Below are positions 10,521 to 63,094 of a stretch of 64,000 nt of DNA, piece after piece. The DNA comes from Heptranchias perlo. Lineage: Eukaryota. Position numbers and translations under genes: made by a program. Location of the stretch: NCBI RefSeq assembly GCF_035084215.1, contig NC_090347.1:25544001-25608000 (forward strand). Reading direction: 5' to 3'. Within the stretch, counting starts at the first letter, position 1. Each line of letters opens with the position of its first letter. The notes below the pieces were generated by a model. That model was given only the letters and a program-made list of their open reading frames with translations, was not told where the DNA came from and ran no database searches.

Positions 10521-11252
10521 ACCCACTGCAGAATAGCAATAAACAAAACAAATAGAATATTGAACTATTTAACTGGAACAGTCGAGTACATAGCAGAAGA
10601 AGTCATGCTGAAACTATATGCTGCTCTGGTCAAACCCACCTTGAGTACTGTTTGCAATTCTGGTCTCTGAAACACAAGGAGGGAATTCAAGTGCTGGAGC
10701 CAGTGCAGAGCAGAGCCATTATGTTGAGTCCTAGGGCTCGATTTTACCAGCGGGTTCCGGGTGCGTTCCCGGCTGGGGGGGGCGTCGAAAATCGCGATAT
10801 CCAGGTGCGTCACCGGATTGCGCCTCGATCCCGCCCACTTCCGGGTTTCACGCTGACGTGCGGGGGTGCGTGCGCAGACCCCGCTGGTGGGAATCCCGCA
10901 GGCAATTAAAGCCAGCGGGATGCCACTTGAGTGTATTTACCTTGCTTGTTGAGGTCATTAAATGACCTGATTCAGCTGTCATAACAGGAAGTGTGGGATT
11001 TTACCTTCAACTCAGACTGTTTCACACACTGGGGGAAACAGTTTCACTCCAACTGGACGTGTGGCAGCTGCCAAGGTGCACTCCACAGGGGGGGGGAGAG
11101 CCCTCACCCACGCAGGAGGCCACCGCGTCACATAGGGCAACCCCTGCCCTCCACCAGCCCCCCCCAAGCCGACAGACCGACGTGAAACCGCAGCCCCAGT
11201 GCGAGGAACCACCCACCTACCCTGCACAACCCCTCAGACCAACACCTGCCAG

Positions 11253-16159: not shown

Positions 16160-16906
16160 ATTGAGTTACATCGGAACTACAGCACAGAAGCAGGCCTTTC
16201 GGCCCAACTGGTCTATGCCGGTGTTTATGCGCCACACAAGCCTCCTCCTTCCCTACGTTATCTAACCCTATCAGCATACCCTTTTTCGAGAGAAAAGAGG
16301 CACAGCCTGTTCAGCCTTTTCTGATAAGGATATCCTCTCAGTTCTGGTATCATTCCTGTGAATCTTTTTTGCACCCTCTCCAATGCTTTTATATCCTTTT
16401 TATAATATGGAGACAGGAACTGTGCACAGTGCTCCAAGTGTGATCTAACCAAGGTTCTATGCAAGTTTAAGAAATCTTACAAAACCAGGTGCAAGTCCAA
16501 CAGTTGGACTATAACCTGGTGTTGTAAGATTCCTTACATTTGTCCACCCCAGTCCATCACCGGCATCTCCACATCACATCTATACAAGTTTAACATAATT
16601 TCTTTGCTTTTCAATTCTATCACTCTAGAAATGAACCCTAGTGCTTCATTTGCCTTTTTTTCTGGCCTTATTAACCTGCGTCACTACTTTTAGTGATTTA
16701 TGTATCTGTACCCCAGATCCTTTTGCTTCTCTATCCTGTTTAGACTCTTAATATCGAAGCAATATGTGGCCTCCTTATTCTTCCTACAAAATGCACCTCA
16801 TCAAACTTATTTATATTGAAATTCATTTGCCAATTACACGCCCATTCTGCAAGTTTATTAATGTCCTCTTGCATTTTGACGGGTTTTTCCTTTGTAATAA
16901 CTACAC
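16160..16906 (-). mobile_element. CR1 LINE 3' fragment (continues at 20571-20593)
   Basis: RSHLEHCAQFLSPYYKKDIKALERVQ and MQEDINKLAEWACNWQMNFN. Sequence resumes as ccaatttgatgtcatctgcaaat after the younger CR1. Confidence 0.75.
16471..16578 (+). mobile_element. Miniature fold-back Penelope-like 3' end inserted in a CR1
   Basis: Imperfect hairpin aatcttacaaaaccaggtgcaagtccaa/ttggactataacctggtgttgtaagatt followed by the PLE terminus ccggcatctccacatc. 15-bp TSD tctat(g/a)caagtttaa at 16456-16470 and 16579-16593. Confidence 0.8.
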
Positions 16907-25550: not shown

Positions 25551-26606
25551 AGAATAGAATCATAGAATCGTTGCAGCACAGAGGGAAGCCATTCAGCCCA
25601 TCGAGCCCGTGCCGGTTCTTTGTAAGAGCAATCCAGTTAGTCCCATTCCCGCGCTCTTTCCCCGTAGCCGTGCAAATTTTTTCCCTTCAAATATTTATCC
25701 AGTTTCTTTTTGAAAGCCATGATTAAATCTACTTCCACCACCCTTTCAGGCAGCGCAATCCAACTCATAACTACTCGCTGAGTAAAAAAGTTTTTCCTCA
25801 TTTCGCCTTTGGTTCTTTTGCCAATCACCTGTGTCCTCTGGTTTTTAATCCTTCCGCCAATGAGAACAGTTTCTCTTTATCTACTTTATCTAAACCCATC
25901 ATGATTTTAAACACTTCTATCCAACAAATCTCCTCTCAACCTTCTCTGCTCTAAGGAGAACAACCCAGCTTCTCCAGTGTATCCACATAACTGAAGTCCC
26001 TCATCCCTGGAACCATTCTGGTAAATCTTTGCTGCACCCTCTTCAAAGCCTTCACATCTTTCCTAAAGTGTGATGCCCAGAATTGAACACAATACTCCCA
26101 TTGTGGCCGAACCAGTGTTTTATAAAGGTTCAACATAACTTCCTTGCTTTTGTGCTCTATGCCTCTATTTATAAAGCCCAGGATCCCATATGCGTTTTTA
26201 AACACTTTCTCAACCTGTCATGCCACCTTCAAAGATTTGTGCACATAAACCCTCAGGTCTCTCTGTTCCTGCACCCCCTTTAGAATTCTACCATTTAGTT
26301 TATAATGCCTCTCCTCGTTCTTCCTGCCAAAATGTATCACTTTGCACTTGTCTGCATTAAATTTCATCTGCCATGTGTCCACCCATTCCACCATCCTGTC
26401 TATGTCCTCTTGAAGTCTATTACTAGCCCCCTCACTGTTTACTACACTTCCAAGTTTTGTGTCATCTGAATATGTTGGAATTGTGCCCTGTTCACCCATG
26501 TCCAAGTCATTATTATATATCAAAAAAAGCAGCGGTCCTAGTACCGACCCCTGGGGAACACCACTGTATACCTTCCTCCAGTCTGAAAAACAACTGTTCA
26601 CCACTA
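25551..26606 (-). mobile_element. CR1 LINE 3' fragment
   Basis: [32 protein letters not shown] and a CR1 3' UTR. Confidence 0.88.
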
Positions 26607-26869
26607 CATTGTTGGAGTATGGGAAATCAAGAGCAGGAAAGTGAGCACAGAGATTAAAAAAAGGATTAAAGGGGAAGCAGTAAGGGATGAGAGTGGAGAA
26701 GGAAAATGTAATGATCAAGAGAGTCTGGGGAAGAGTGAAGGGAGACATGCAAAGTTGAGTGCATGAAATTAGGAACCAGGAGAGGTTCAGTGTAAAAGTG
26801 GTTGAGATTGGGAGGCAGAATCAAGTCAGGGACACATTCAGGTAGAGTGCTTGCAGCTCTGGGTGAGGC

Positions 26870-34690: not shown

Positions 34691-35091
34691 TTATCCGGAA
34701 AACTGGAGGAAGTTCGGGCTTGATCCAAGACTTGATATCAGGAAAACAGTTGAGACATGGAGGCAGTGGGAGCATCAAGAGAGGTAGTGGAAAGGTAGGT
34801 TCTAGATGTCATCAGTGTACATGTGGTAGCTGATCTCATGTCTGCAATGGTATGACCAAAGGGCAGCATGTAGATGAAGAACAAGACAGTGTCCCTGATG
34901 TGCATTTCCAGCAGGCGTCATGAACAGTGACTTCACTTCAATATTATAATGGGAGTGATGATGTCAGTGAGAAATTCCAGCTATCTCTTGGCAGTTATGG
35001 TGTATTCACACTCATTCAGAAGAATACTTATGTACAATGACTGTTTCTGATTGTTAGGCAGCTGGTGGATATAGAAGTGTTGATGTAATGG

Positions 35092-35868
35092 GTCTTACAA
35101 CACCAGGTTATAGTCCAACAGCTTTATTTGGAATCACAAGCTTTCCATAAAGGCACAGCATATATAGTCAGAGAACAATGCCTGGTGATTACAGATAATC
35201 TTTCCAACTGCCCGTTATCACACCTCGGCAGAGATATAATCAAAGCAATCAAAGGAATGGATGGTGTTCAGACAGAGAAACATTACATCCCAGACTACTG
35301 AATGCACAAGCGGTCATAACACAAAGACAGAGAGAGAGAGAGAGAGAGAGAGAAAAACACCCGAAAGGCAGAGAAAGAGAGAGAATGACCAGTTGTATTA
35401 AAAACAGATAACTTTTTTTTGCTGGTGGGGTTACATGTAGCGTGACATGAACCCAAGATCCCGGTTGAGGCAGTCCTCATGGGTGCGGAACTTGACTATC
35501 AATTTCTGCTCGACGATTTTGCGTTGTCGTGTGTCTCGAAGGCCGCCTTGGAGAACGCTTACCCGAAGATCGGAGGCTGAATGTCCTTGATTGCTGAAGT
35601 GTTCCCCGACTGGGAGGAAACCCTCCTGTCTGGCGATTGTTGCGCGGTGTCCGTTCATCCGTTGTCGCAGTGTCTGCATGGTCTCGCCGCTGTACCATGC
35701 TCCGGGGCATCCTTTCCTGCAACGTATGAGGTAGACAACGTTGGCCGAGTCACAGGAGTATGAACCATGTACCTGATGGGTGGTGTCCTCTCGTGTGATG
35801 GTGGTATCTGTGTCGATGATCTGGCATGTCTTGCAGAGGTTGCCGTGGCAGGGTTGTGTGGTGTCGTG
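35092..35868 (-). mobile_element. Penelope-like retroelement, 5'-truncated, GIY-YIG endonuclease C-terminus + 3' UTR
   Basis: ANVVYLIRCRKGCPGAWYSGETMQTLRQRMNGHR...VGEHFS...EQKLIVKF...LNRD is a GIY-YIG domain. The 3' UTR is shared with 53401-53929. Contains a (GA)n tract at ~35329-35353. Confidence 0.85.
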
Positions 35869-36540: not shown

Positions 36541-37785
36541 ATAGGGTGGATAAAGGGGAACCAGTGGACGTAGTGTATTTAGACTTCCAGAAGGCATTCG
36601 ACAAGGTGCCACATAAAAGATTATTGCTCAAGATAAAGAATCACTGGATTGGGGGTAATATTCTGGCAAGGGTGGAGGATTGATTATCTAACAGGAAGCA
36701 GAGAGTTGGGACAAATGGTTCATTCTCGGACTGGCAACCAGTAGCCAGTGGTGTTCCGCAGGGGTCGGTGCTGGGTCCCGAACTCTTTACAATCTATATT
36801 AACGATTTGGAGGAGGGGACCGAGTGTAACATATCAAAGTTTGCAGATGATACAAAGATGGGAGGGAAAGTAGAGAGTGAGGAGGACATAAAAAACCTAC
36901 AAGGGAATATAGACAGGCTGGGTGAGTGGGCGGAGATTTGGCAGATGCAATACAATATTGGAAAATGTGAGGTTATGCACTTTGGCAGGAAAAATCAAAG
37001 AGCAAGTTATTATCTTAATGGCGAGAAACTGGAAAGTACTGCAGTACAAAGGGATCTGGGGGTCCTAGTGCAAGAAAATCAAAAGGTTAGTATGCAGGTG
37101 CAGCAGGTGATCAAGAAGGTCAACGGAATGTTGGCTTTTATTGCTAGGGGGATAGAATATAAAAACAGGGAGGTATTGCTGCAGCTATATAAGGTATTGG
37201 TGAGACCGCACCTGGAATACTGCATACAGTTTTGGTCTCCATACTTAAGAAAAGACATACTTGCTCTCGTGGCAGTACAAAGAAGGTTCACTCGGTTAAT
37301 CCCGGGGATGAGGGGGCGGACATATGAGGAGAGGTTGAGTAGATTGGGACTCTACTCATTGGAGTTCAGAAGAATGAGAGGCGATCTTATTGAAACATAT
37401 AAGATTGTGAAGGGGCTTGATCGGGTGGATGCAGTAAGGATGTTCCCAAGGATGGGTGAAACTAGAACTAGGAGGCATAATCTTAGAATAAGGGGCTGCT
37501 CTTTCAAAACTGAGATGAGGAGAAACTTCTTCACTCAGCGGGTAGTAGGTCTGTGGAATTTGCTGCCCCAGGAAGCTGTGGAAGCTACATCATTAAATAA
37601 ATTTAAAACAGAAATATTCAGTTTCCTAGAAGTAAAGGGAATTAGGGGTTACGGGGAGCGGGCAGGAAATTGGACATGAATTTAGATTTGAGGTTAGGAT
37701 CAGATCAGCCATGATCTTATTGAATGGCGGAGCAGGCTCAAGGGGCCGATTGGCCTACTCCTGCTCCTATTTCTTATGTTCTTAT
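36541..37785 (+). mobile_element. Young 5'-truncated CR1 LINE
   Basis: 303-aa open RT C-terminus (SKFADDTK...LWNLLPQ) and a 3' UTR ending ttcttatgttcttat. Confidence 0.92.
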
Positions 37786-37859
37786 ATCTGTCACAGCTGC
37801 TCTGGTAAATTGAAGTCTTTGATTTGTCCTATGAAGCAGTGGAGGTATGTTGACCTCTA

Positions 37860-39097
37860 TCTTCCTTTCCTGGCCCCCATGTTAGCTGATATTGTTAACA
37901 GTTCCCTCTCCTCAGGTACTATCCCCCTCCCCTTTAAATCTACTGTCAACATGCACCTCCTCAAAAAAACCACCCTTGACCCCTCTGTCCTTGCAAACTA
38001 TCACCCCATCTCCAACCTCCCTTTCCTCTCCAAAGTCCTTGAACACGATGTCGCCTCCCAAATCTGTGCCCATCTTTCCCGCAACTTCGTGTTTGAACCC
38101 CACAATAAGGTTTCCATCCCAGCCACAATACTGAAACGGCCCTTATTAAAGTCACAAATGACATCTTATGTGACTGTGACCATGGTAAACCAATCCTCTT
38201 CATCTTTCTTGACCTGTCTTCAGCCTTTGACATTGTTGACCACACCATCCTCGTCCAACGCCTCTCCTCTGTCGTCCATCTGGGTGGGACTGCACTCGTG
38301 GGGTTCCATTCTTATATATCCAGTCGTACCCAGAGACTCACCAGCAATGTCTTCTCTTCCCGCTCCCGCACCATTAGCTCAGGAGTCCCCCAAGAGTCTA
38401 TCCTTGGCCCCCTCCTATTTCTCATCTATATGCTGCCCCTCGGTGACATCATACGAAAACACATCAGGTTCCACATGTACACTGATGACACCTCACTACC
38501 ATCTCCCTCGGCCCCTCCGCTGTCTCTGGTTTGTCACACTGCTCCAATACTGGATGAGCAAAAATTTCCTCCAACTCAGTATTGGGAAGACCGAAGCCAT
38601 TGTCTTTGGTCCCTGCCACAAACTTCCCTAGCCACCAACTCCAATCCTCTCCCTGGCCATTGTCTGAGGCTGAACCAGACTGTTCACAAACTTGGTATCC
38701 TATTTGATCCTGAGATGAGCTTCCGACCACATATCCATTCCATCACCAAAACCGCCTACTTCCATCTCTGTAACATTGCCCATCTCTGCTCCTGCCTCAG
38801 CTCATCTGCTGCTGAAACCCTCATCCATGCCTTTGTTACTTCTAGCCCTGACTACTCCAATGCTCTCCTGGCCAGCCTCCCATCTTCCACCCTCCATAAA
38901 CTTGAGCTCATCCTAAACTCTGCTGCCCGTATCCTAACTCGCATCAATTCCCGTTCACCCATCACTCCTGTGCTCGCTGACCTACATTTGCTCCCGGAAC
39001 GGGAATGCCTTGATTTTAAAATTCTCATCCTTGTTTTCAAATCCCTCCATGGCTTCACCCCTCCATATCCCTGTAACCTCCTCCAGCCCTACAACCC
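37860..39097 (+). mobile_element. L2-clade LINE ORF2 fragment
   Basis: NYHPISNLPFLSKVLE, SGVPQESILGPLLF, YTDDT, WMSKNFLQLSIGKTEAI and ETLIHAFVTS. Confidence 0.85.
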
Positions 39098-41827
39098 ACA
39101 TGGCATAGATATGACGTAGAGATATAAGTAATGAATTACGTATCCTGTTTTTGAACTCTGGTCCAGGCTGACGCACTGAAAAGGTATTTTCAGGTTCTGT
39201 ACATTCTTATATTCCTAAACGTGTTCCTTTTTATATTTTAAATGTTCGCGTTTTGAGTCTGTACACTCAGTCTGAGTGAAGTCTGTCTGTTTTGATGTTA
39301 TAGCTGTGGCTTAACTGCCATTAAAAGCCAACACTACTATGACTCAGTTCAGTTGTTAAAGAACTCCACCATTCATCTGTGAAACACTATCTTATTTCTC
39401 CGAGTTACATTGAGCCTGGTTTTTACATAGCAGAAACTTTGAGGTATACTGTACAACTGCTCAGCTTTGTTGTGGCCTGTGAAGTGGAAATTTTTTTCAT
39501 GTATGATATGTTTATCAGATAAAACTGTGGACAATCACAAGTCTGCAGCATTGTCATTCTTTACCAGAACAAATAGAATCAATTTGACAAGATAATCAGA
39601 ATGTCCTCTGGAATTGCTGGATGTCTGTAGACTTTTATGCAGGAACTGTCAAAATTTGACAGAAATCTTTGTCAACACAGCTCTTTCAAGGGCTAGTTTG
39701 GTAAAGGAAAGGTCTTGAATGAAACTCAGAAATATCCTTTCCCTTTTAGGAACTTTATTAAATAATTCGTGCTTTGATTTTACACCAAAATTGCACATTC
39801 TTGTTGAAGATCCCTCCGACACAAGCAGAAATCTTATGATATACATCTTAAAAAGTGCTCACAACTCACGTTAGAATGGATGTTGTTCTTTTCCTAAATT
39901 TGAAACAACTGACCAGAGGTGGTCCATTTATGGGAATCCATAAAGATTCTTTAGATCAAGTAATATTTTAGAAAAGCTCCATGATGTTGAGGTATTAGGC
40001 TACAGTTAAATAGACCTGTATACAATTGCAATAATAAAGTTTGCGACTTGAAATTTAATGAACACTATTCCCACTTAAATGGCCGATGCATGTACTATTG
40101 TATTTTTAAAGAGTTCACAGACTTATTACATCCTGAAGGTGAAACGTAGTAAACATTTATGTGTTCGGGGAGGGGGAGGGGCAGCTGAGTCTCGTCATTT
40201 GATAAGACAACGTGCGTTTTTCACAATAATATATTGTAATTGTAGAGAAATATGGAGAGTCGATGCTATTTTCACTTGTCAGAACATATTGTTATACGAT
40301 TATTGTTATTTGATGTGTAATTTAATTAAGCTTGATTGATAGCATAACTTCAAAGGCAAAAATGATTTTTAACACAGGACTATACCAATCTTCTGCATTT
40401 CATTCCCGAACTGAGCTCATTAGAAAGAATTTGGTGTCATAAACTGATTTTATGTATACCATAAGGGAGATCTCAAGAAGCCAAAAGACATTGCTAGAAC
40501 ATAGTTTATTTTATTGTTTGTGTCATTAAAATTCTGCAAAACACACATGAGCTAAGGGCTCTTTAAGAGGACAATTCCATGCTATGCACAGATGACAATA
40601 TTGCCTTATTCTGATTATATTGCCTGAATCTAAAATGTCTAAATATTTATTAATACATGAATAAATACTGTAATAATTTTAGCCTGTACCAGTCTAGTGC
40701 TGAGATTGAAATTTTTAAAATTTGAATAGGTTGAATTTTAGTTTACAATTGACTTCATTTGGATTAGGCACAGACCACATTATGCCTTATGCAAAGGCAG
40801 AAATGGTTAAGAGGTGTACTTCTGGTATGAGGGAAAAGGCTCACTTACCTTATCTTTCCTCTTGCAAGATAAAATAGTTTCACTAAGTGTTAAACCACAT
40901 GTTCGATGCAAATCCTTGTATTGCAATTGTTTATCTTTGCTCTCGGTGTATATGTCAGTATAAATATCAAGATGTATACTTTTTCCCAAAACATGAGTCA
41001 TTTTTAATATCGGTAAGTGAATCAGCTTTCCATTGAATGATGAAAGCCTTAGCTGTCCAATCCCACTTATACAAAGAGTAGGCACAAATTTTGTGGAAAT
41101 TAAAATAGCAAATGATATACGTGTTTTCTGGTTTCCACTTGCAATAGTGAATAACAATATCTTAAGACTGATACTCTCCTTTGATTCGAATCTTGAGGGG
41201 TAGGTTTCAAACAACACTCTTTTCCGATCAGCCAATTTAAAAATAAAATGATCTTCTATTGCTTGTCAAAATAATATTTTGTGAGACAAATTAAGACGTT
41301 AAAATTATAATGTTACAGAAAAACTACTTTGAACATTTGTTTGTATAATGACTCTGGCCTAGAATTTCAAACTCACCTGCAAGGGGGGAGGGCACACTCT
41401 CTACAGGGACTATGTGAAATTGGTGCCACCAACTCATTGTCATGAGTCAGGCATGCAGCCAGCGCTACCCACATGACTTATTGTCTTGGGGAGGGCAGGA
41501 AATCGGGCTTGACTAACACCACTTAAGGTGAGCCAGCACCTCTTGAAGGAGAGATGCACTTTGGCTGCAGACAGCAGGGAATCATTCTCAAAGGGATAAA
41601 ATGGTTGGAAGAACTACAGAAAGGGCGTCCAGGTTCTCGGATGCAGCTTTGGAGGACCTGGTCCAGGCTGTCAACAGGAGGAGGAAGATCCTATTTTCCT
41701 CTGGTTGGGGGGTGGGGGAGACAGAAAGGATGGTGGCCATAATGATTGTGGAACCATTGGTGCATTGGGAATAAGAGAAATGGTTCACGTGCTCTTGAAT
41801 GAGCTGCTTTCAAAGAGTTCTGGTAGC

Positions 41828-50170: not shown

Positions 50171-53100
50171 AAAGAAGTAAAATGACAATTTTATGTAATC
50201 CAATCAACGTGTTTGGTTTTAATCAAGGGTAATATCACCAATGGTGAAGTTATTTCACATTTCTACAGAGACTAACATAACACCATTAGAACAGCCTCTT
50301 CAAAACCTCTCTGTTCTTTCCCTCAGTCACCACCCTTAACCTTTCTCACATCATTGATAGGTGTCCGGTTATTTTCAGTTCTGCGAAGCACTGCAGGATG
50401 TTTTGTGATGTTAAAGGCACTATAGAAGTGAAAGATGTTGTTGCAAATGCACTTGACAAGCAGCACAAGGCTTTAGATTTAGAATAATGTGATCACTGAA
50501 AGCAGTACTGATGCCAGCTGAAAAGGTCACGGTAATAGCGTATGATGGAAAAGGGAAACCACAATGGGTTCGGAGCCAAGCGACTGTGATCTACATTTCA
50601 GCATCAACGCTCGAACATCTTCTCCGCAGAAAGGACGGCCGCAAAACACTCAATATTGAATTTTTATTCGCTACTTTTGTTGTCTCTCAATATACAACAT
50701 GGCAAATAAGAGAATCCTAAAAAAAAACAAGGTTCTGTGTTTACACACATAATTAATTTTACCTACCTAGAGCTCAAAAGATTTTCCATGGTTGTAGCTA
50801 GAATTTTTGAAGAGCACACTCTTTATGTCTCACAATGCATGAAATCCATTTATTCTCAGACAATTTTCTATTATGTATAAAAATCAGAACATGAGAAAGA
50901 TGACGAAGTGGGTTGCATTTACACACCAAAATGTTAGCACTGCAGAGACTGGTGTGTAAACAATGAAGTTCAACCACCATCACAGGGAATTTGCAAGTAA
51001 AACCAGCAAGATGTTTTTAAACTTGAATTGTTGATTACAGCAATGTAAACACAACTTCCAAACCCATAGCAAATTCTAGATGGATTTGCTCTCAGTTTGC
51101 TGTGTGCAATGTAAATGCGTCAGTCCACTGATGTACCAGTTTGCTGAGCTGAAGACTGGTTGGACGCAAGTTTGCCCTTGCCATTTACAAGGTGGGTGCT
51201 GGGCCTTAGCTGAACCATTTAGGAGAGGCACTGATTGAATGAAGGACACTTTCCCATACAATGGGAGGAAAATCAGAGGAGAAGGAGGCAAGCCAGATCA
51301 CACTCACCCTCTTTCTGGTGACTGGTCCTGCACTGGCACAGATCCAGTATGAGATTGTATTCACTCTGTTTGTTGGAGAATGGTATGTGGCATTGTCAGC
51401 AGAGAAGGTGCTTTAAAAATGGAACATTTAAAAAAAAAACAACTTCACAATATTTGAGCATGATTATTTCTTCCAAATCTAACAGATTAGAATGAATGTA
51501 ATTTAAAACACAAGGAACATTAAAACATTAAACATATTGCATATGAGCATGTAAAGTACATAAAAATGTTCACATAAATGTACTGTTACTGACAGTAATA
51601 GCATATTCAAGACATTTTATACTAGATAAGACGAAACTACAATTCAAATTTTTAAAAAAACATCCTACTGAGGCATTATGATAAAACTAACCACCAAATG
51701 TCAGCTGTAACCTCACACTGAGATGTCACCACTGACGTCCACATTTCCTGAACTTGTTTTTCAATAGCACTGTGGTAAGATTCTTTGATTCATCACATCA
51801 AGTGGCTAAGTTTCCATCAAGGTATTCATGATATGGTTTCATAATTCAGTTAAACTCATCAGTTAATGAGAACATAAGGTTTTGTTGACAGGCTTGTAAA
51901 ACAAGCTAAACTGTGAGAAGGCTCTCGTGCACTCAGCTTGTATGCACTGCCATAGAGCTTTGTTCTTATATGGTGCTGCGGCTGAGATTTAGCCTCATTT
52001 GTTAAATTGAGAAACCTAGTCAAGTGTCAAGGACACTTGTGCAAGGAACCGCCAAGGTTGAAAAGATCCTTAGAAGCAGGATAAGGAGATATCAAGCTTA
52101 GGTTTTAAAAAGCCTTTAGGTTGCAGGAGGAAGGAGAGACGAAGGGAGTTAAGAAATTCCACAATATTGATATTGTGGGAAAAGAATAAGAGATGTTCCA
52201 ATGAATCTTGTTTCAACATGAGGGAGAGGGAAGGGAATGGAACGAGGATAAAGGGCTTGTAGGGCAGCATATCTGGAGATTAAGAGATCAAAGGAGAAAT
52301 AACATAACAGTAATAAAAGAGAGAAATTGGAGATAAGAACTCTCAGAGCTTTATTTAATATAAGTCATAATTGCAATAAACCTTTTACTGTTACTATGTT
52401 TGAAATAATTTTCATGGTTTAAACTTGCACACACATTTTCATTTTTAAATGAGAACTTTTCATTAAGCTGCATAACTTTACTTTATCAGAGTTTCCATTA
52501 CTTAAGTGTCATAGTCCTGGCACCCTTGAATTTAAACTCATATGATTCATATATGTGAACAAGATATAATCTGATAACCATGATGCAGATTTTCACAAAT
52601 TCATTTCAGAAAAATCTGTTAACACGGCAGACTCTTGGAAGATTTAATCCAACGACTGAAAAGGTTTTGGTGAGCCTGCTGATAAAATTTGTAGCAATGT
52701 CTACTTACTGGGAACATGAGCATTAATTTGGATGACGCATTGAGGTTTAGATTGCACAACTGTGAAATAACCACCATGGACAGAATACGTGCAACTAACA
52801 ACAGGCAGACCTAATCTGGACAATTTCATTTTTTTGCAAACATGTCAGAGAAGGTGAAGCAAGAAACAGATAAAAAATGAACAATTTCACTGTGTGGATG
52901 TGATACACAAACTCCAAAAAGGTGCCAAGTTTGATCAATATGGGCTGAATTAGCTGGGCTCAGCAACATCAGTAATGCTGACCCTACAGCTGGCCTCGGA
53001 AGAACAATATATCTGTAAATCCTGCTCCCAATGCAATGTAGCAACCCCCTGCTGGAGTGCATGCAGGTCCGGATGTCAGATCAGGAGATGGTCCTCAGCT

Positions 53101-53489
53101 GCACTGCCTCCACAAAAGGAAGATTTCCTCCGTGGTCCCTGTGTAACAAAATGGGCTACACAGGTGAAATCTTCCCAATACCACACAGTCAAACAGCCTG
53201 CTGACAGTTTAGGTTCACACATGAAGCGTCAGTGAGATAAAGTATGACAAGAGTGGCTGGAGTCCATGAAACCATGTCCTACGAAAAGCTACCATCATCA
53301 GGATAGGAGGGAAGGAAAGGGGAGAAAACTGGCATTTTATGTTTAAAGTTGCTGGATCTGGCACAGTATGGCTCATGAAAGTCTCAGTATAAACCATTTA
53401 TGATGTGAAGATGCCGGTGTTGAACTGGGGTGTACAAATGTAAGGAATCTTACAACACCAGGTTATAGTCCAACAGTTTTATTTGAAAA

Positions 53490-53526
53490 TCACAAGCTTT
53501 CGGAGGCTTTCTCCTTCGTCAGGTGA
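53490..53526 (-). ncRNA. Minimal hammerhead ribozyme (mirror copy, on the CD7-like gene strand)
   Basis: Exact reverse complement of 53839-53875, within the left arm. Confidence 0.75.
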
Positions 53527-53838
53527 GTGTCGAGACTCATTGAAAATTACCGCATATATAGTCATAGAACAATGCCTGGTGATTACAGACAATCTTTCCA
53601 ACTGCCCGTTATCAAGGCCATCAAATTAATTGAATAGTGTTCAGACAGAGAAACCTTAGATACCCCAGACAAACGGCCGTTTGTATATTCAGTTGTCTGG
53701 GGTATCTAAGGTTTCTCTGTCTGAACACTATTCAATTAATTTGATGGCCTTGATAACGGGCAGTTGGAAAGATTGTCTGTAATCACCAGGCATTGTTCTA
53801 TGACTATATATGCGGTAATTTTCAATGAGTCTCGACAC

Positions 53839-53875
53839 TCACCTGACGAAGGAGAAAGCCTCCGAAAGCTTGTGA
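53839..53875 (+). ncRNA. Minimal (PLE-type) hammerhead ribozyme
   Basis: TCAC-CTGACGA-A-GGAG-aaagc-CTCC-GAAA-GCTT-GTGA. Helix I is TCAC/GTGA, the core is CUGANGA and GAAA, helix II is GGAG/CTCC, and a palindromic AAGCTT replaces helix III. Confidence 0.75.
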
Positions 53876-54444
53876 TTTTCAAATAAAACTGTTGGACTAT
53901 AACCTGGTGTTGTAAGATTCCTTACATTTATAAACCATTTAGATATTTGTACTATAAACTGAGTTAGGTTTCTCGGCACACTGACCAAGAAGCTAATACC
54001 AGGGAACAAGCTGTCGAGCATCTCAGATAGGTTTTTCAGGTATATGAATCGTGTATATTACTGATACATTAGTGTAGCACATTTGTGTGGAGCTTTACCT
54101 CCACTGTTCTTCATGAGGTTGATTAAAGATCATTGTTCTATTAAAGGGAGACACTGATTATAGATTAGATGCTCCTCACAGGCAAGAAAGAAGTCCACCT
54201 GTATCACATTATTACTACAAATGTGGCAATGATAGATGTCTGGCAGCAGGGGATTGTGGGTTTCCTCACTTTCCTGTCAAACAGCACATGGACACTTAAG
54301 GGCAGTGAGGGCAGGGAAGAGGAGAGAGGAAGGGATTTTTTTTAAAAGTGAGATGACATTTGTTCCCCATACAAATGGTGTACTGTTCCTTCCAAAGCAG
54401 GCACTCTACTTATTCCATAAATATAAAACAAAATAATGTTTTTA

Positions 54445-54557
54445 CTGCAGCAGTTCAAGAAGGCGGCTCACCACCACCTTCTCAAGGGCAATTAGGGATG
54501 GGCAATAAATGCCGGCCTCGCCAGCGACGCCCACATCCCATGAACGAATAAAAAAAA
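54445..54557 (+). mobile_element. Short LINE/SINE 3' tail
   Basis: ctgcagcagttcaagaaggcggctcaccaccacc...gacgcccacatcccatgaacgaataaaaaaaa. Confidence 0.65.
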
Positions 54558-54730
54558 CTCTTACATTGCAAAAAGAGCTGTGAAAGCACTACAAGTTGGA
54601 AAGAGTTAAGAATTTTATGATTCCATGGAAACATTTAACCTTTAACAGCAAAAGTGAATCAAAAGCACAAAGCTGCCCGTGCTCCAGGTTAATGAGGTAT
54701 CTGGTCAAATTGAAGCCATTCCTCTGAAAA

Positions 54731-54832
54731 CTATCGTGCCATGCTTTGTGTTCGAACCAGGTTCATATCTTCATACACTGAGTTCGGAGCTCTCCCACGC
54801 TGTGGCTGGTCACGCCGGCAGAGTTTCTTTAC
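54731..54832 (-). CDS. CD7: CD7-like receptor, cytoplasmic terminal exon
   Basis: tttttag acceptor, phase 0. Encodes VKKLCRRDQPQRGRAPNSVYEDMNLVRTQSMAR*. KKLC and VYEDM match the human CD7 tail (IKKLC...VYEDM). Confidence 0.88.
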   Translation of the reverse strand, partial: VKKLCRRDQPQRGRAPNSVYEDMNLVRTQSMAR

Positions 54833-56399: not shown

Positions 56400-59300
56400 A
56401 AGAAAGGTAAGCCCAAGTTTAGAGAGGGGCATAAGGGAGAAAGCAGACTGAAAAACCTTTACAACTGAAGATCTTGTAGATGGGTTTAGAAGGCTGATAA
56501 TTTCCATTCAAGGGTGCTGATGGAGTTGGCTGAGGAGATTGCAAATCCTCTCACTGATACTTTGCCCAATTCCAATGAACTTTGAAATGTCCCAATGAAT
56601 CAGAAAGTAGCAAATGTGACTTTATTCTTTAGAAAAGGGGCAAGGGATAAAACCTAAAAATTACAGATCCTTGGGCTTTACCCTGATTATGGGGGAATGT
56701 GTTTGAGATGTTGATGAGGGATAGCATATGGGATCATCTGGAAGGACAGTCTTATTAAAGAGAGTCAGCATGGGTTTAAAAGGGGCCGATCACAGCTGAC
56801 CAATTTTGCTGGAAATGTTTGAGGAGGTTTTATCTGGTGGATAAGGGTGAGGTAGTAAATGTTAATCTACTTGGACTTCTGGAAGTCATTTGACACTGTT
56901 GCACAGAACCGACTGATTCACAAGATGTGTGCCCATGGGTTACATAGCAATATATTAGGATGAATTTACCCTTGGTTTAGAAGTAAACAGCAAAGGGTGG
57001 GGAGGTGACAAAGTGTAAACCGGTTATCAGTGGAGTCCCACGGGGGTTGGTGTTGGGGGCTGTTGTTTTTGTAATTGTTATAAATGGCTTATAGGAATAT
57101 TTGACAAGATATCTAAGTTTGTGGAAGAAACCAAATTGGGGATAGTGTCAATGGGCCTGATTTTAGCAGGCCTGCGGGTTTCCGGCGGGTTGGGTTTCGG
57201 GTGCGTGGCCTCCGCGCCCGGTGAAATTAGTGGGTTGCCCGCGCGATCGTAGCAGGCAATCCACTAATTGGAGCCACTTACCTGCTCCTCCGGGGTCCGC
57301 GCTGCTGGCCTGCGCGTCGGTCGGGCTGCGCATGCGCAGTACGATCTGTCAGCTGGAGGCTCTCTAGTTAAAGGGGCAGTCCTCCACTGACAGATGCTGC
57401 AACCAATGGAACAAATTACAGCATGGAGCAGCCCAGGGGGAAGGCTGCTCCCAGTTTAATGATGCCTCACCCCAGGTATCATCAGATGGGGTGAGGAGGA
57501 GGGGGAGGACAGAGATCTTCCCCCCGGCGGGCGGGAGGAAGCTGCCTGCCTCTGCCACCAAGAAGGCCTGGCTCGAGGTGGCATAGGGGGTCACCTGCGC
57601 CACCAACATATCGCCCAACTGCATACAGTGCAGGAGGCGGTCCAATGACCGCAGTAGGTCAGCCACAGTGAGATGACGTAGTCTTTCCCCTACACTCCGT
57701 CTGCCACAACACTGCCCCCACCCCACATCTCCTTCGGCACCGCCAACACTACTCTGTCACATCACCCCTCATACCCACTCAAACCCCATCCTCATCTTAC
57801 CTGCACCTACTCACCTCGCCAGTACTCACCCCGCCACTAACACGCAACCCAATCCTCATACAATCTCATGGCTCCATCCCATACTCACCCTCTCATGCAT
57901 CTCCCTCACGGCCAGCCTCACTCAACCTGCCACCACCTGTGCTGCAGCCACAGGGCATGCATCACATATGTGCAGTAGGTAGCGTAAGGAAAACGTGTTG
58001 TGAGCATGAAGGGGATGCACAAGGGTGTCTGAGGGTTTGCCATGGGTGTTACCTATATTGAATTTCAGAGCAACAAACATCACACATTATATTGGCACCG
58101 CCACTGCCATGTCTCCGCGAATCCTGTCTGTTGTGTCCAATAATGCCCGCTCCTGGGTATCACTATGAGGACCCACAACTGATGCCACCCATTGTGTTAC
58201 TGCAGAGAAGGTGCAGGTGTATTTGCGCAGACGACTAAGAGACATCGGCGGTGTACCCGGCTGCACCCTGGAAGGATGCGGAGGAGAAGTTGTGGAGGGC
58301 AGTGGTGACTTTGGCAGCGACAGGTAAGCAGATGGTGCTGGGGCCAGCCAGGAGCAGCTCGGCATGAAAGAGCCTGCAGATCTCCACGACTACATGTCGA
58401 GTGAATCTGTGCCTCCGTGTGCACTGCTGCTCGGAGAGGTCCGGGGAGCTGCGCCTCGGTCTGTGGACCCTGTGGCGAGGGTAGTGCCCTCTGCGACGCG
58501 TCTCTCTCTGCGGTTGCCCTCCCTCCTGCTGTGCAGGTGGACGTGCAACAGCACCGTGTTGGGGGGCTCCACGTCTGTGCGGCGGACGGCGTGGACTGCG
58601 AGGCTGCTGGTGCTGGTCATGCTGTTCGTCCTCCGAGGGTGTCCACGCACCACCCATCTGGCAGGTGTTGGTCTGAGGGGTTGTGCAGGGTAGGTGGGTG
58701 GTTCCTCGGACTGGGGCTGCAGTCTCGTGTCGGTCTGTCCTCTGGCTTGGCGGGGGGTGGTGGGGGGCAGGGGTTGCCCTATGTGACGCGGTGGCCTCCT
58801 GCGTGGGTGAGGGCTCTCCCCCGTGGAGTGCACCTTGGCACCTGCCACAGGCTGCTGGCTGCAACACGCCTGGTTGGAGGTTTCCCCCAGTGTGTGAAAC
58901 ACCCTGCGTTGAAGCTAAAATCCCACACTTCCTGTTTTGACAGCTGATTCAGCTCATTTAATGACCTCAACAAGCAAGGTAAGTACACTCAAGTGGAACC
59001 CCGCTGACTTTAATTGCCTGCGGGATTCCCACCAGCGGGGGCTGCGCATGCAGCCCCGCACGTCATCGGGGAACCCGGAAGTGGTCGGGATCGTGGCGCG
59101 ATCCGGTCACGTGACTGGATATCGGGATTTTCGGGGCCCCCCCGCTGGAAACCCGACGGTAAAATCGAGCCCAATGATGCTAACCAACATGCAATAATTC
59201 AAAGAAATCTAAGCAGGTTAGGTCAATAGGTAGCAAGGTGCCAGATGGAGTTCAACATGACCAAATGTAAAGTTATGAGATGAGGTAGAAGAAACAAGAT

Positions 59301-59930: not shown

Positions 59931-60762
59931 TATCAAGGTAGACCAATAGTCTTCCTCTGCCTGAAACATGAATACATTACTGTGTTACAATGTCTTTTAC
60001 AGAGCTCCAAAGTGAATTCTAGACCCTAGGAGGTGAAAAATGCCATTTGTAAGGAACAGAACATTTTCTCCACTTTTAACTGCTCGTGTAAGTGATAGCA
60101 TCAAGCACTCCTACACTCGGCCACAACAATACGAATTAACACCAAATGAAGAAAAATACCCTCTGCTGGGTTAGATTAGCACCGGCCCCCAGGATAAAAG
60201 GACAAATGTTTTAATTCAATGCATCACCCAGTTTCCCCAGCACATAATATTCAATTTACTCAATCTTGCATAATATCAGTGGGATTCTGCCTGAGTAAAA
60301 AGAGGGAAAGTATAATGCCAGGACAATGTCCTTTTCTCCTAGCGTCATGGCATGTCTATTTTTACAACAATAATATCTCCAAACAATGTGCCGCACAATG
60401 GCAATGAAATCCCTGCTGCATTTTGGGATTTTTTACCATAACCTGAAAGGAATTTTGTTTTGATTTAAAGATGAGATTCATCTTATAAAGGGCGAATCCT
60501 TCAAGATACAAGTGACCGACACAATTTCAGCCATTTTTCAGGAATAAAAGTTTTTAAAAATGTTGGTTATATACAAACTGATGGAATTGTTCCGGGGCAA
60601 GTGATCATAAATTTCTATTTGTTTTGGATTCCTGTACGTACAAAGTGAATGAAAACCAACCAAATAACATGTGCCTTCATATATCCATTTTTTTATTTAT
60701 ATATTATTTTTAAGTAGAAGCTTTGCTTCAGTGAATGATGATATTTGAAACCTAAAACATAC

Positions 60763-61101
60763 CTGACACCAAAATCAATGTTCCTTGTCCCCAGTAATTT
60801 GTTTCTTTACCACCTCTTATTCCAAACTGACAGTAGTAAATATCTGTGTCATTTTTCTGGAGTTTTTTGAGGATTATGGTGAATTTTGATTCATCTCCTG
60901 TTAAATTATAACGTTCGGTGTATAATTGGTGTACAGTTCTTTTCGTTTTGTGGATGTAGATCACATCAGTGGCATTTGAAAGGTTCCTTTTTAAATAGGT
61001 GCCGACAAGGGTCAATGGTTTGAACTTAATTTCGCACGTAATTGACACGGATTCTCCATTTTTCACTTGATAAAAGAGAGGAGTCTGGGAAATTTGGACT
61101 T
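60763..61101 (-). CDS. CD7: CD7-like receptor, V-set Ig domain exon (phase 1/1)
   Basis: Bounded by a tttacag acceptor and a g|gtatgt donor. Encodes (E)VQISQTPLFYQVKNGESVSITC...GTYLKR...FTIILKKLQKNDTDIYYC...YWGQGTLILVS. Has the B- and F-strand Cys and the DxxxYxC motif. The C-strand reads GTYLKR without the canonical Trp, as in human CD7 (GIYLRQ). Confidence 0.85.
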
Positions 61102-63094
61102 CTGTAAAATACACAATTGAAAATATAGTCAGTACAGTCAGAAAACTCTGAATGGGATAATCACTTATCAAACAAATATTTGTGTAAATAGTTCATTAAT
61201 TAAAGAAGAACAGAGGTGTAGAAAGAGGGGATAATTATGTGTATCTTTCCAACATTTCATGTCACTGGAGAAAGATGGCTCCCTTGCAACATCTGAGAGT
61301 CGAGGTGTCACTCCATTCCATTGCATAATGAGGGCCTTGGCTAAGGCAGATGCTAAAATGCTTCATGCCCACACATCAAAGGGTAGTAATTTTGACTGAC
61401 AGCTCAGTGGGCCAAACCCACCTCCTTCTCACAGACTCAAGGCAGAGGACAGATACATTTCCTGATGCTCCCTCTATCCCTCCAGCCACAAAGGAAGCAG
61501 TGGTCTAGCATGTTAAAAAGTTTCCAAGCCAGCTAGCTTTGTATCGGTTAGCTTTAGAAGGAGCCTATGTTTAGTTAATAAGTTACATCTTTATTATTTT
61601 CCATAACTGAGGATAATAGGAAATTGGCTGTCCACACTGTAAAAACTGTGTATTATTCATTCAATATATTGAATATAAAATAAACCAGTTGATCGCTTCA
61701 AGTTGTGCCTAGTCTCGACAGAGTGCTTTTCAGCCCCGCTTCCATAAAGAGGAGAACACATGTAACGGCATAAGTTATATTTCAGTGAACACTAAATGGG
61801 GCTATTATGATCCCTGGGTCATGCTGTTATTCAACTAGATATTTGGGCAGTAAATATACATTCCAGATTGTAGGGAACACTTGGCCCCCGATTTTAAGCC
61901 GGGGTAGGATCGGTCCATGCAGGGGGCCTTGGCAAGCAACAAGCTCGTGTGTTGAGGCCTCGAGAGATTTTAATTCCCAGGCCTCACTTCCATATCCAGG
62001 CCCCGATTTCCATCCGAACCTGGCAGAAATCATTGCCTGGCCAACGAGACAGAGTGAAAATTCGGGCGGTCCCGGGATCTTCTGGCCCACGATTCAGTTC
62101 CCAACAGGTTTGCCTTGGTGGGGAATCCATCATTGATCCCCCGCTCAGGCCCCTAGTTAAAATATCAGATTGGGCCCCGGTTACTTCATCGGAGCCTGAT
62201 CTGCATATTTAAAGAGGACCCCGCTGGTTGGAGCGGATGTCCTTGCTGTGGTCAGATTGGGGTGGGAAAGGAGTGGGAAAGTCCCCCACTCCATTTTAAC
62301 TGTGAATTAAAGCTGTAGCCTAGATCTTCTTCAGGAGTGACTAGTGACGCTAAACCTAGAAGAATATCTAGTGCAAAAATCTGAAATTTATGACCCTCAT
62401 TAAGAACAGTAAAAGACAGCAACCCTTCCCCAATAGTCCAGCACAGATGAAAGATAGAGCTTAGGGAGGGGGAAGAGGGACAAAAACATTATGTAAGAGA
62501 AGGGTGTTTGGGAAATTTTGAAAGTATGGAAGGAGGAATTATTTAGGGAGGAAGTGCAGGGAGCAGGGCCAGAGGGACTGAAGGAATGACCATTAACGTT
62601 AGAGCAAAGGACATACCGAGTCAGGAGTAAGCCTGTATCTGACGAACTGTGGATGTACCTGGAGAGATCGCTGAGGTAAAATGGAGTAAAGCCACTGATT
62701 GATTTTAAATGAATTTCAAATCAAAGAGATCTTTTTGTGTGCTGCTTTATATTCATGGAAGAATTAATATTTTCATACTTTGAAAAAAATTCCAATACAG
62801 TTAGACAACTAAAGTACTGTAAACTTTATGAATTACTAAAGTTTCACAAGTATGCCAGTCAACTGCATTATGTAAGATCATATCTGATTACTTCACTCTT
62901 TAGGTAACAATTTCGAAAAGATTTATCATTTTATTTTCTGCCATTTCAGCACTTTAAAATTTGGAACTCTGAGGGAATGTAGTGGTGCTGTTGATAAGGG
63001 CATCAGCATGTATTTCCATAGAATGAAGGGGATCAGGAATCCAACCCCTACACTACATTTCATATCTCAGCCATTACTTCATGGGGCAGCTTCA

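What the first reader, a model, noticed from the sequence alone, without database searches (positions are those of the whole stretch)
53401..54731. A Penelope fold-back may supply the 3' end of the CD7-like mRNA, adding a ~200-bp perfect dsRNA hairpin and a hammerhead ribozyme
Seen: the 237-bp perfect inverted repeat begins ~800 nt after the stop codon. Scanning the minus strand from 54731, I found no AATAAA or ATTAAA (only variants such as AGTAAA ~54441, CATAAA ~54614 and TATAAA ~53927) until AATAAA at 53483-53478. That site is inside the distal arm, just 3' of the sense-strand hammerhead (53526-53490). Inference: an mRNA ending there carries both arms and folds into a long perfect duplex. 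Known: such duplexes are substrates for ADAR, Dicer and MDA5/PKR. The duplex would also sequester the ribozyme, so a recent retroelement insertion could act as a post-transcriptional switch on a T/NK-cell receptor.
Basis: partly seen in the sequence, partly recalled or inferred. Interest (0 to 1): 0.8.

Follow-up and report, generated by a model that had tools for sequence, protein, structure and literature searches.

The report
Penelope fold-back in CD7-like 3' UTR
A young, hairpin-shaped fragment of a Penelope-type retroelement sits in the transcribed 3' untranslated region of a shark or ray CD7-like immune-receptor gene; the sequence observations hold, but RNA contigs do not show that the mRNA ends at the element's AATAAA, and its ribozyme is of a kind reported not to cut on its own, so this is mostly an ordinary transposon-in-UTR case.

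Summary
A 528-bp insertion (53401-53928) lies between 13-bp target-site duplications. It consists of two inverted, 5'-truncated copies of one element, with 237 bp of perfect complementarity. Each strand carries one minimal hammerhead motif followed by AATAAA. A 35-nt AC-rich tail sits at one end only, which is a published Penelope-like element (PLE) signature.

The gene is real and expressed. It encodes a V-set Ig receptor whose closest relative is the catshark "T-cell antigen CD7-like". RNA contigs show the GT..AG splice into the terminal exon.

The 3' UTR contigs reach the fold-back, so there is no sign of an earlier poly(A) site. In two libraries nothing lies beyond the insertion. In the library with the deepest contigs at this gene, a contig resumes on the far side and runs to 52542. 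Contigs cannot place the 3' end, give the strand or cross the repeat.

The AATAAA would be buried in a -460 kcal/mol duplex as soon as it is made. The insertion also created a UAUAAA at its proximal junction. No A-to-G editing was listed. Single PLE hammerheads showed no detectable self-cleavage in vitro.

This scan had already noted many PLE fold-backs elsewhere in this genome. Interest is low to moderate.

The parts
54731..54832 (-). Coding part of the terminal exon of the CD7-like gene (VKKLCRRDQPQRGRAPNSVYEDMNLVRTQSMAR, stop TAG 54733-54731)
   Evidence: Spliced joint with GT..AG ends in contigs of X1, X2 and X3. Translation. The C-terminus nearly equals that of catshark 'T-cell antigen CD7-like' P0001.
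53942..54730 (-). Proximal 3' UTR, transcribed. It contains an antisense SINE-like repeat at about 54444-54560.
   Evidence: Contigs X1 53929-54473 and 54530-54832, X2 53885-54473 and 54530-54828, X3 53893-54464 and 54530-54828.
53929..53941 (.). Right copy of the 13-bp target-site duplication TATAAACCATTTA
   Evidence: Read directly. It abuts the insertion exactly, and the same 13-mer lies at 53388-53400.
53388..53400 (.). Left copy of the 13-bp target-site duplication TATAAACCATTTA
   Evidence: Read directly.
53401..53928 (.). The whole insertion: two inverted 5'-truncated copies of the 3'-terminal part of a Penelope-like element, with both 3' ends facing outward
   Evidence: The architecture is as described for PLEs in PMC8557442 and PMC11167929.
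53673..53928 (+). Right copy (element sense on the + strand), 256 nt, without tail. Its first 20 nt form the 'spacer' of the inverted repeat.
   Evidence: The alignment with the older copy at 35083-35295 shows that the spacer sequence belongs to the parent element. A paralogous RNA contig follows 53774->53675 and then diverges (records 16 and 25).
53401..53672 (-). Left copy (element sense on the minus strand, the mRNA strand), 272 nt, with tail
53401..53435 (-). 35-nt AC-rich 'tail' present at this end only
   Evidence: About 30 of its 35 letters (my count by eye from the reads) recur in the tail at one end of the mini fold-back at 16468-16577. A 30-40 bp one-sided tail is a PLE signature.
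53490..53526 (-). Minimal type I hammerhead motif in mRNA sense (UCAC CUGACGA A GGAG-AAAGC-CUCC GAAA GC U U / GUGA)
   Evidence: Descriptor match, 0 of 200 shuffles. The isolated fold shows helices I and II at -9.4 kcal/mol.
53839..53875 (+). Mirror copy of the hammerhead on the + strand (antisense in the mRNA)
53478..53483 (-). First canonical AATAAA after the stop, 7 nt after the hammerhead, followed by the GU-rich stretch GGUGUUGU. It lies inside the predicted duplex.
53927..53932 (-). UAUAAA variant hexamer created by the insertion (4 nt of the duplicated target plus 2 nt of the element), with a U-rich stretch about 35-45 nt downstream
   Evidence: The left duplication copy reads TATACT, so the hexamer did not exist before the insertion.
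52542..53400 (.). Non-coding stretch beyond the fold-back. It is covered by one contig in X1 and by fragments in X4, and is absent from X2 and X3. Strand unknown.
   Evidence: record 1: 52542-53449, no mismatch; records 23, 24. No ORF longer than 86 aa.

Best explanation
This is a 528-bp dead-on-arrival insertion of a Penelope-like retroelement in the 3' UTR of an expressed CD7-like gene of a cartilaginous fish.

How it arose (inferred from anatomy and published biochemistry): the element's GIY-YIG endonuclease nicked both strands of an AT-rich target 13 bp apart. Each 3'-OH primed reverse transcription of element RNA, one from the start site that includes the 35-nt tail and the other from the start site 35 nt upstream. 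Both cDNAs stopped after about 260 nt and were joined head to head. That gives two outward-facing, identical, 5'-truncated copies.

What it does: it has no function of its own. It is transcribed passively as part of the 3' UTR (the mRNA reaching its edge is shown). It probably perturbs 3'-end formation. In two libraries transcripts appear not to continue past it, because nothing was laid beyond; in one library RNA is present on the far side.

Where the short form ends is open. My preference is a site in or just after the first-transcribed arm, after the junctional UAUAAA. Otherwise I expect heterogeneous ends, rather than clean use of the distal-arm AATAAA. That signal emerges when its perfect complement is already available and would be buried in a 237-bp duplex (inference).

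RNAs that contain both arms would form a long perfect dsRNA. The single minimal hammerhead is most likely inert in this context.
For: Insertion and its kind:
- 13-bp direct repeat exactly at both edges.
- 237/237 complementary arms.
- One-sided 35-nt AC-rich tail.
- A purified PLE protein cleaves and extends both strands, prefers AT-rich targets and starts reverse transcription at two adjacent internal sites that define the tail (PMC11167929).
- The minimal hammerhead shows the four hallmarks named by Cervera and de la Pena. It is found only here, and never in 200 shuffles.
- A second, shorter fold-back with the same one-sided tail lies at 16468-16577.

Transcription:
- Joint 54832/55875 with GT..AG in X1-X3. 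UTR contigs run to 53929, 53885 and 53893.
- The left junction is covered without mismatch (X1 52542-53449, X4 53165-53450).
- Nothing at 52000-53335 in X2 or X3.

Occlusion:
- The minimum-free-energy fold pairs the whole arms, including the AATAAA, at -459.7 kcal/mol.
- Extending the HIV-1 polyA hairpin inhibits polyadenylation (PMC2645353, title and abstract only).

Ribozyme:
- A single min-HHR showed no detectable self-cleavage, and dimers cleaved weakly (PMC4209133).
- An Anolis PLE hammerhead needed the element's protein (PMC11167929).
- Only one sense copy lies on the mRNA strand in the 64 kb.
Against: - All RNA evidence is from assembled contigs of four runs of one sample. Contigs cannot show a 3' end, a strand or a level, and cannot cross the repeat, and a gap in them proves nothing (tool caveats).
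- The AATAAA at 53483 has a good context, with a GU-rich element about 20-30 nt downstream. It is the only canonical signal for more than 2 kb, so it may well be used.
- No RT/GIY-YIG ORF was linked to this terminal sequence here, so 'Penelope' rests on structural signatures.
- No read spans the whole palindrome.
- A snap-back of a single cDNA would also give identical arms.
Confidence: 0.7

Rival explanations
1. One reading: the CD7-like mRNA is cleaved and polyadenylated about 15-25 nt after the AATAAA at 53483-53478 in the distal arm. The mature mRNA then ends with the complete 237-bp hairpin and a sequestered sense hammerhead.
For: It is the only canonical hexamer between the stop and 52648 on this strand, and GGUGUUGU lies downstream. 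X2 and X3 have UTR contigs up to the fold-back and none beyond it.
Against: X1 has a contig directly beyond the insertion (52542-53449) at a contig depth above that of the proximal UTR. The signal lies inside a perfect duplex whose other strand is transcribed first, and stable hairpins over AAUAAA inhibit its use (PMC2645353). No contig or loose end with a T-run was reported near 53455-53465, and no T>C differences were listed over the arms. Both absences are weak evidence.
Confidence: 0.25
2. The short mRNA form ends about 25-35 nt into the first-transcribed (proximal) arm. It uses the UAUAAA at 53932-53927 that the insertion created at its junction. That mRNA carries neither a hairpin nor a sense hammerhead.
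For: The hexamer exists only because of the insertion. It and its cleavage zone are single-stranded until the second arm is made about 500 nt later (inference). The X2 and X3 contigs stop at 53885 and 53893. They carry 7 and 6 mismatches crowded at that end, which would fit a 9-10-nt A-run after cleavage at about 53895-53902 (my count on the sequence; the contig letters were not visible).
Against: UAUAAA is a weak variant. The mismatches could equally come from the assembly graph switching into another element copy. The X1 contig stops at 53929, not at 53895-53902.
Confidence: 0.25
3. A long isoform reads through the whole fold-back and ends near 52542. The 237-bp duplex is then an internal element of a roughly 2.2-kb 3' UTR. 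This may be the pre-insertion 3' end, with tissue-dependent choice between the long and short forms.
For: X1 has contig 52542-53449 with no mismatch and with no coverage at 52000-52541. X1 is also the run with the deepest contigs over the gene's exons. The stretch has no ORF.
Against: No poly(A) hexamer lies 10-35 nt upstream of 52542. ATTAAA at 52648 and AATGAA at 52605 are too far away. The contig carries no A-run at that end. Its depth (281) exceeds that of the proximal UTR (136), although the tool warns against using contig depth. X4 has pieces of this stretch without the coding exons.
Confidence: 0.35
4. The RNA beyond the fold-back is a separate transcript. One possibility is read-out from a promoter in the left element copy. 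The other is a + strand RNA that starts at about 52542 and ends at the mirror-image AATAAA (53882-53887) in the right arm. In the second case the fold-back would terminate transcripts from both directions.
For: The distal-to-proximal relation differs qualitatively between runs: distal contig present in X1, none laid in X2 and X3, and distal pieces without coding-exon contigs in X4. The contig end at 52542 is clean and has no A-run. PLE pseudo-LTRs are reported to hold promoters (PMC6765202). The insertion is symmetric, so each strand meets an antisense arm and then a sense arm with hammerhead and AATAAA.
Against: No TATA box at -30, and only a weak initiator-like match at 52542 (read). The arms hold only about 260 nt of the element. 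No strand information is available.
Confidence: 0.3
5. The palindrome is an assembly artefact.
For: Perfect palindromes can arise from fold-back long reads, and no read spanning the palindrome was seen here.
Against: There is an exact 13-bp target-site duplication and a one-sided PLE tail. The left junction is confirmed without mismatch by RNA contigs of two runs, and X2 and X3 contigs cross the right junction. The stretch lies mid-window, not at a contig end.
Confidence: 0.03

Closest known systems
Penelope-like element insertions with an inverted 5'-truncated copy and a one-sided 30-40-bp tail (Evgen'ev and Arkhipova 2005; Craig et al. 2021, PMC8557442; Frangieh et al. 2024, PMC11167929)
   Same: Inverted 5'-truncated copies, a 35-nt AC-rich tail at one end only, an AT-rich target, a target-site duplication, and a hammerhead in the terminal repeat region.
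   Different: There is no ORF at all. Only the last roughly 260 nt of the element are present twice. The link of this terminal sequence to an RT/GIY-YIG ORF was not shown here.
Minimal type I hammerheads of PLEs (Cervera and de la Pena 2014, PMC4209133; Lunse, Weinberg and Breaker 2017, cited in PMC7761336)
   Same: [quoted passage not shown]
   Different: It stands alone on its strand with no tandem partner, and it faces a perfect antisense copy. Activity was not tested.
Inverted-repeat Alu pairs in human 3' UTRs (from my own knowledge: Chen, DeCerbo and Carmichael 2008; Ahmad et al. 2018)
   Same: Two inverted retroelement copies in a 3' UTR that would fold into a long dsRNA, a potential substrate of ADAR, MDA5 and PKR.
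   Different: Here a single insertion event made both arms, so they are perfectly paired with a 20-nt loop. Editing, nuclear retention and sensing are all untested. No A>G difference was listed in the contigs.
Discontinuous hammerhead in the 3' UTR of rodent Clec2 genes (Martick et al. 2008, as summarised in PMC6765202)
   Same: A hammerhead between the stop codon and the poly(A) signal of an immune-cell surface-protein mRNA.
   Different: The Clec2 ribozyme is a full, active hammerhead shown to lower expression. This one is a minimal dimer-type motif, single, sequestered and of recent transposon origin.
Poly(A) signal occlusion by RNA structure (HIV-1 polyA hairpin, PMC2645353)
   Same: An AAUAAA inside a stable stem.
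   Different: The stem here is about 237 bp and perfect, and the effect on use of the signal is inferred, not measured.

Membership tests
Penelope-like element (PLE) insertion | Inverted and/or tandem 5'-truncated copies forming pseudo-LTR-like repeats | tested here: met
   Two inverted copies, 53673-53928 (+) and 53672-53401 (-), with 237 nt identical. Feature as described in PMC8557442.
Penelope-like element (PLE) insertion | 30-40-bp extension ('tail'), often at one end only, reflecting two adjacent RT start sites | tested here: met
   A 35-nt AC-rich tail at 53401-53435 is present at the left end only. The same one-sided tail occurs at 16543-16577. Feature.
Penelope-like element (PLE) insertion | Hammerhead motif in the terminal repeat | tested here: met
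   Descriptor match at +53839-53875 and -53526-53490.
Penelope-like element (PLE) insertion | AT-rich target and target-site duplication | tested here: met
   13-bp TATAAACCATTTA on both sides, which contains ATT. Target preference.
Penelope-like element (PLE) insertion | Belongs to a family whose full-length members encode a telomerase-like RT plus a GIY-YIG endonuclease | not tested
   No such ORF is adjacent. The RT fragments elsewhere in the window (26218-26748, 36768-39119) were not linked to this sequence. The host genome cannot be searched with these tools.
PLE-type minimal hammerhead ribozyme | Conserved cores CUGANGA and GAAA, with H at position 17 | tested here: met
   CUGACGA ... 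GAAA GC U U (H17 = U).
PLE-type minimal hammerhead ribozyme | Extra nucleotide between 9 and 10.1, a G10.1-C11.1 pair, and palindromic 15.2-16.2 (Cervera and de la Pena 2014) | tested here: met
   An extra A, GGAG/CUCC closed by G-C, and the AGCU palindrome.
PLE-type minimal hammerhead ribozyme | Match to curated hammerhead covariance models | tested here: not met
   No Rfam hammerhead hit at gathering score or at E <= 10. That would fit motifs that lack helix III, but I did not test the models on known PLE hammerheads.
PLE-type minimal hammerhead ribozyme | Self-cleavage, normally as a dimer of tandem copies | not testable with these tools
   Only one sense copy per strand lies in the 64 kb. 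A single motif was inactive in vitro.
CD7-like Ig-superfamily receptor | Single V-set domain with a J-like GxGT motif | tested here: met
   PF07686, E = 3e-12. The V exon reads ...YYCQFGIRGGKETNYWGQGTLILVSG.
CD7-like Ig-superfamily receptor | Closest named relatives are CD7-like, with a conserved tail | tested here: met
   The V exon is 51% identical to 'T-cell antigen CD7-like [Scyliorhinus canicula]'. The terminal exon peptide RAPNSVYEDMNLVRTQSMAR differs from that protein's C-terminus by one residue.
CD7-like Ig-superfamily receptor | Orthology to mammalian CD7 and expression in T/NK cells | not tested
   Exons were searched one at a time, and the joined model was not searched. The tissue of the runs is unknown.

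The most novel reading that the evidence does not exclude
Because it is mirror-symmetric, the fold-back acts as a two-way 3'-end cassette. On either strand a transcript meets an antisense arm and then a sense arm with hammerhead, AATAAA and a GU-rich element. At this locus it would set a tissue-dependent choice between a short CD7-like mRNA ending in the insertion and a long form carrying a 237-bp perfect dsRNA. An immune-receptor mRNA would thereby become a conditional substrate for ADAR, Dicer, MDA5 or PKR.
Probability: 0.1. Interest if true: 0.55.

Novelty: new member of a known kind. Interest (0 to 1): 0.3.

Why it matters
If the insertion really redirects 3'-end formation of an expressed lymphocyte-receptor gene, it would be a clean, datable example, in a cartilaginous fish, of a Penelope-type element reshaping a host 3' UTR. 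It would also introduce a perfect long dsRNA into an immune mRNA. That parallels inverted Alu pairs in primates, but here a single insertion event would have made both arms.

As things stand, the finding mainly documents a textbook PLE fold-back insertion. The locus shows all the marks predicted by the recent in vitro work: a target-site duplication, use of two start sites, and priming on both strands. It lies in a transcribed UTR, and the scan's notes say that similar insertions are common in this genome.

Tried and rejected
- Rfam at gathering score and at E <= 10 gave no hammerhead. The only 'hits' were plant and animal miRNA precursor models (MIR7127, mir-1954) far below their thresholds. 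I read these as artefacts of any perfect hairpin.
- Editing signature: the listed differences are A>C, C>A and C>T only. There is no T>C on the + strand. This is weak evidence, because contigs drop rare variants and the arms are swamped by paralogous copies.
- Heterozygous 'empty' allele as the reason why the X1 contig stops at 53929: rejected. No joint 53400/53942 was listed, and the left-junction contig runs on into the element.
- The fold-back as a self-propagating hairpin family: not supported. A paralogous contig follows the right copy through the spacer and then diverges at 53675, as a linear parent would (records 16 and 25).
- The absence of a canonical poly(A) signal over 1246 nt as a meaningful signal: rejected, P about 0.14-0.22 by chance.
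- The element's AATAAA as its own poly(A) signal: unlikely. The element ends 77 nt downstream and has no A-tail.
- The search of earlier findings by sequence returned nothing.
The catshark locus could therefore not be fetched to look for an empty site.
- The PDB sequence search of the V exon gave only generic antibody V domains.
No consensus of the element was built.
Full report
**1. What is in the sequence**

The inverted repeat is real. Its arms, 53429-53672 and 53693-53936, are 99% complementary with a 20-nt spacer. The only two mismatches sit at the outer end, so the perfect part is 53436-53672 / 53693-53929, 237 nt.

Reading the flanks shows the same 13-mer, TATAAACCATTTA, at 53388-53400 and at 53929-53941, directly against the repeat. 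The unit between them, 53401-53928 (528 bp), is therefore an insertion with a target-site duplication.

The left arm, read on the minus strand, runs 35 nt further (53435->53401, AC-rich) than the right arm does on the plus strand. An older, 68%-identical copy at 35083-35295 aligns through the 'spacer'. The spacer is thus simply the first 20 nt of the right-hand copy.

The insertion therefore consists of two copies:
- a plus-sense copy at 53673-53928;
- a minus-sense copy at 53672-53401 that carries the extra tail.

Both are 5'-truncated and both have their 3' ends facing outward.

**2. What kind of element**

Craig et al. (PMC8557442), writing about the Naiad clade, list as previously known PLE features that insertions are strongly 5'-truncated, that an inverted 5'-truncated copy often lies adjacent, and that a 30-40-bp tail is often present at one end only.

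Frangieh et al. (PMC11167929) studied a purified PLE protein. It cleaves and extends both DNA strands and prefers AT-rich targets (an ATT motif). It starts reverse transcription at two adjacent internal sites in an AC-rich region, and those two sites define the tail. Every one of these marks is present here.

A second, much shorter fold-back lies at 16468-16577 in the same window. It has the same one-sided tail, about 30 of 35 letters identical by my count from the sequences.

The hammerhead was checked with a descriptor written from my reading of Cervera and de la Pena 2014 (PMC4209133). It requires:
- a 4-bp helix I;
- CUGANGA;
- an optional extra nucleotide;
- helix II closed by G10.1-C11.1;
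- GAAA;
- palindromic 15.2-16.2;
- U16.1 and H17.

It matches only at +53839-53875 and -53526-53490, and never in 200 shuffles. All four hallmarks that those authors list for PLE min-HHRs are present. Rfam's models do not see the motif.

I did not link this terminal sequence to an RT/GIY-YIG ORF. 'Penelope' therefore rests on structural signatures. No consensus of the element was built.

**3. The gene**

The ORF at 60752-61171 (minus strand) holds a V-set Ig domain (PF07686, E = 3e-12). Its best relative is 'T-cell antigen CD7-like [Scyliorhinus canicula]' at 51% identity.

The terminal exon encodes ...RAPNSVYEDMNLVRTQSMAR*. This differs from the C-terminus of that catshark protein by one residue. 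The stop codon is 54733-54731.

Exons were searched one at a time, and the joined model was left out. The species is an elasmobranch. At 51% identity the gene is not a close copy of that catshark protein; it may be a paralogue or come from another species.

**4. RNA evidence**

Four runs of one sample hold the stretch as assembled contigs. X1, X2 and X3 carry a joint 54832/55875 with GT..AG ends on the minus strand. These runs are therefore RNA, and the gene is spliced as modelled.

The contigs lie as follows:
- Proximal UTR: 54530-54832 and 53929-54473 in X1, 53885-54473 in X2, and 53893-54464 in X3. There is no sign of an end before the insertion. The break at about 54473-54530 is the SINE-like repeat.
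- Beyond the insertion, X1: one 908-nt contig, 52542-53449, without mismatch. It runs from unique flank through the tail into the arm.
- Beyond the insertion, X2 and X3: nothing at 52000-53335.
- X4: scattered low-depth pieces, including intron, so it is uninformative.
- 52000-52541: empty in all runs.

The tool warns that contigs cannot show ends, strand or level, and that holes prove nothing. My readings are accordingly modest.

(a) The mRNA reaches the fold-back.

(b) In two libraries nothing was laid beyond it, which suggests their transcripts end inside it.

(c) In a third library RNA exists beyond it. That RNA is either a read-through isoform or a separate transcript.

No T>C (mRNA A>G) difference was listed.

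**5. Where the short form could end**

The minus strand has no AATAAA or ATTAAA between the stop and 53483. A gap of that length occurs by chance in 14-22% of cases here.

The AATAAA at 53483-53478 has a GU-rich element downstream. However, it is transcribed after its perfect complement. The predicted fold pairs both arms completely (-459.7 kcal/mol, z = -55), against -9.4 kcal/mol for the hammerhead fold alone. Stable stems over AAUAAA are known to inhibit its use (PMC2645353, from its title and abstract).

The insertion also created a UAUAAA at 53932-53927, made of four target bases plus two element bases. That site stays single-stranded until the second arm appears.

The X2 and X3 contigs end 36-44 nt into the first arm with 7 and 6 mismatches crowded at that end. 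A 9-10-nt A-run after cleavage at about 53895-53902 would give those numbers. So would a switch of the assembly path into another element copy. Editing fits less well, because it would need about all A's of that stretch changed and none in the outer 20 nt. I could not see the letters, so this remains unexplained.

**6. The RNA beyond the insertion**

The X1 contig ends cleanly at 52542. It has no A-run there and no poly(A) hexamer 10-35 nt upstream: ATTAAA at 52648 and AATGAA at 52605 are too far away. The stretch has no ORF of note.

Three possibilities remain:
- the distal part of a long 3' UTR, perhaps the pre-insertion one;
- read-out from the left element copy, since PLE terminal repeats are reported to hold promoters (PMC6765202);
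- a plus-strand RNA that ends at the mirror AATAAA at 53882-53887.

**7. The ribozyme and the 'switch'**

PLE min-HHRs lack helix III. A single Schistosoma min-HHR showed no detectable self-cleavage in vitro, and dimeric constructs cleaved weakly. The Anolis PLE hammerhead needed the element's protein, and no RNA ends at its cleavage site were found in vivo.

Here only one sense copy lies on the mRNA strand, and it faces a perfect antisense partner. Self-cleavage is therefore unlikely; I put it at about 5%. Nothing supports a regulatory switch.

**8. Age**

There are zero differences in 237 paired positions. Assume the arms were identical at insertion and a rate of 1e-9 per site per year, which is my assumption. 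The 95% bound is then about 6 million years. It would be looser if cartilaginous fish evolve more slowly, and it is meaningless if the arms homogenise by conversion.

**9. Verdict**

The element is a textbook PLE fold-back insertion in a transcribed 3' UTR. The claim that it supplies the mRNA's 3' end at its AATAAA is possible but unproven, and it is contradicted as the sole outcome by one library. The dsRNA consequence holds only for RNAs that contain both arms. The ribozyme part is improbable.

The scan's own notes list this same hammerhead pair, the CD7-like gene, and many similar fold-backs elsewhere in this genome. One of them lies just after the stop codon of a TMIGD2-like gene. The pattern is therefore common here.

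Noticed in passing
window 16468-16577: A second, much shorter Penelope-type fold-back. It has a roughly 35-nt antisense arm, a roughly 38-nt sense arm and the same 35-nt AC-rich tail at the right end only. It is too 5'-truncated to hold a hammerhead.
   Followed up: partly
window 35083-35295: An older copy of the same element family (68% identity, minus sense). The hammerhead core is deleted, but the sequence of the 'spacer' is preserved, which shows that the spacer belongs to the parent element.
   Followed up: partly
window 54444-54560: A SINE-like repeat, plus-oriented with an A-rich end, so antisense in the CD7-like 3' UTR. Paralogous RNA contigs pile up on it in all four runs. The C>T variants at 54513 and 54519 come from other copies.
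   Followed up: no
window 52542: Abrupt end of the X1 RNA contig. There is no coverage at 52000-52541 in any run and no nearby poly(A) hexamer. This is either a transcript start or an unconventional 3' end.
   Followed up: partly
window 54099 and 54218: C>A at 54099 in the X1 and X3 contigs but not in X2, and C>T at 54218 only in X3, although all four runs are recorded as one sample. Possible causes are heterozygosity or more than one individual.
   Followed up: no
window 11199-12086: An ORF with a DDE_Tnp_4 transposase domain (E = 3e-15), which suggests a DNA transposon remnant.
   Followed up: no
window 19274-19846, 26218-26748, 36768-39119: Fragments of retroelement ORFs: Exo_endo_phos and RVT_1. 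Whether any of them is Penelope-type was not examined.
   Followed up: no
window 57364-58947: A stretch inside the CD7-like intron with long overlapping ORFs on both strands (up to 210 aa). The one ORF scanned had no Pfam match. Its nature is unknown.
   Followed up: no
table 5c (53529/53854 with 12 letters between): Contigs in X1, X2 and X4 (contig depth 65-300) look like other, shorter fold-backs of the same family with a different loop. If so, such hairpin RNAs are expressed from other loci.
   Followed up: no
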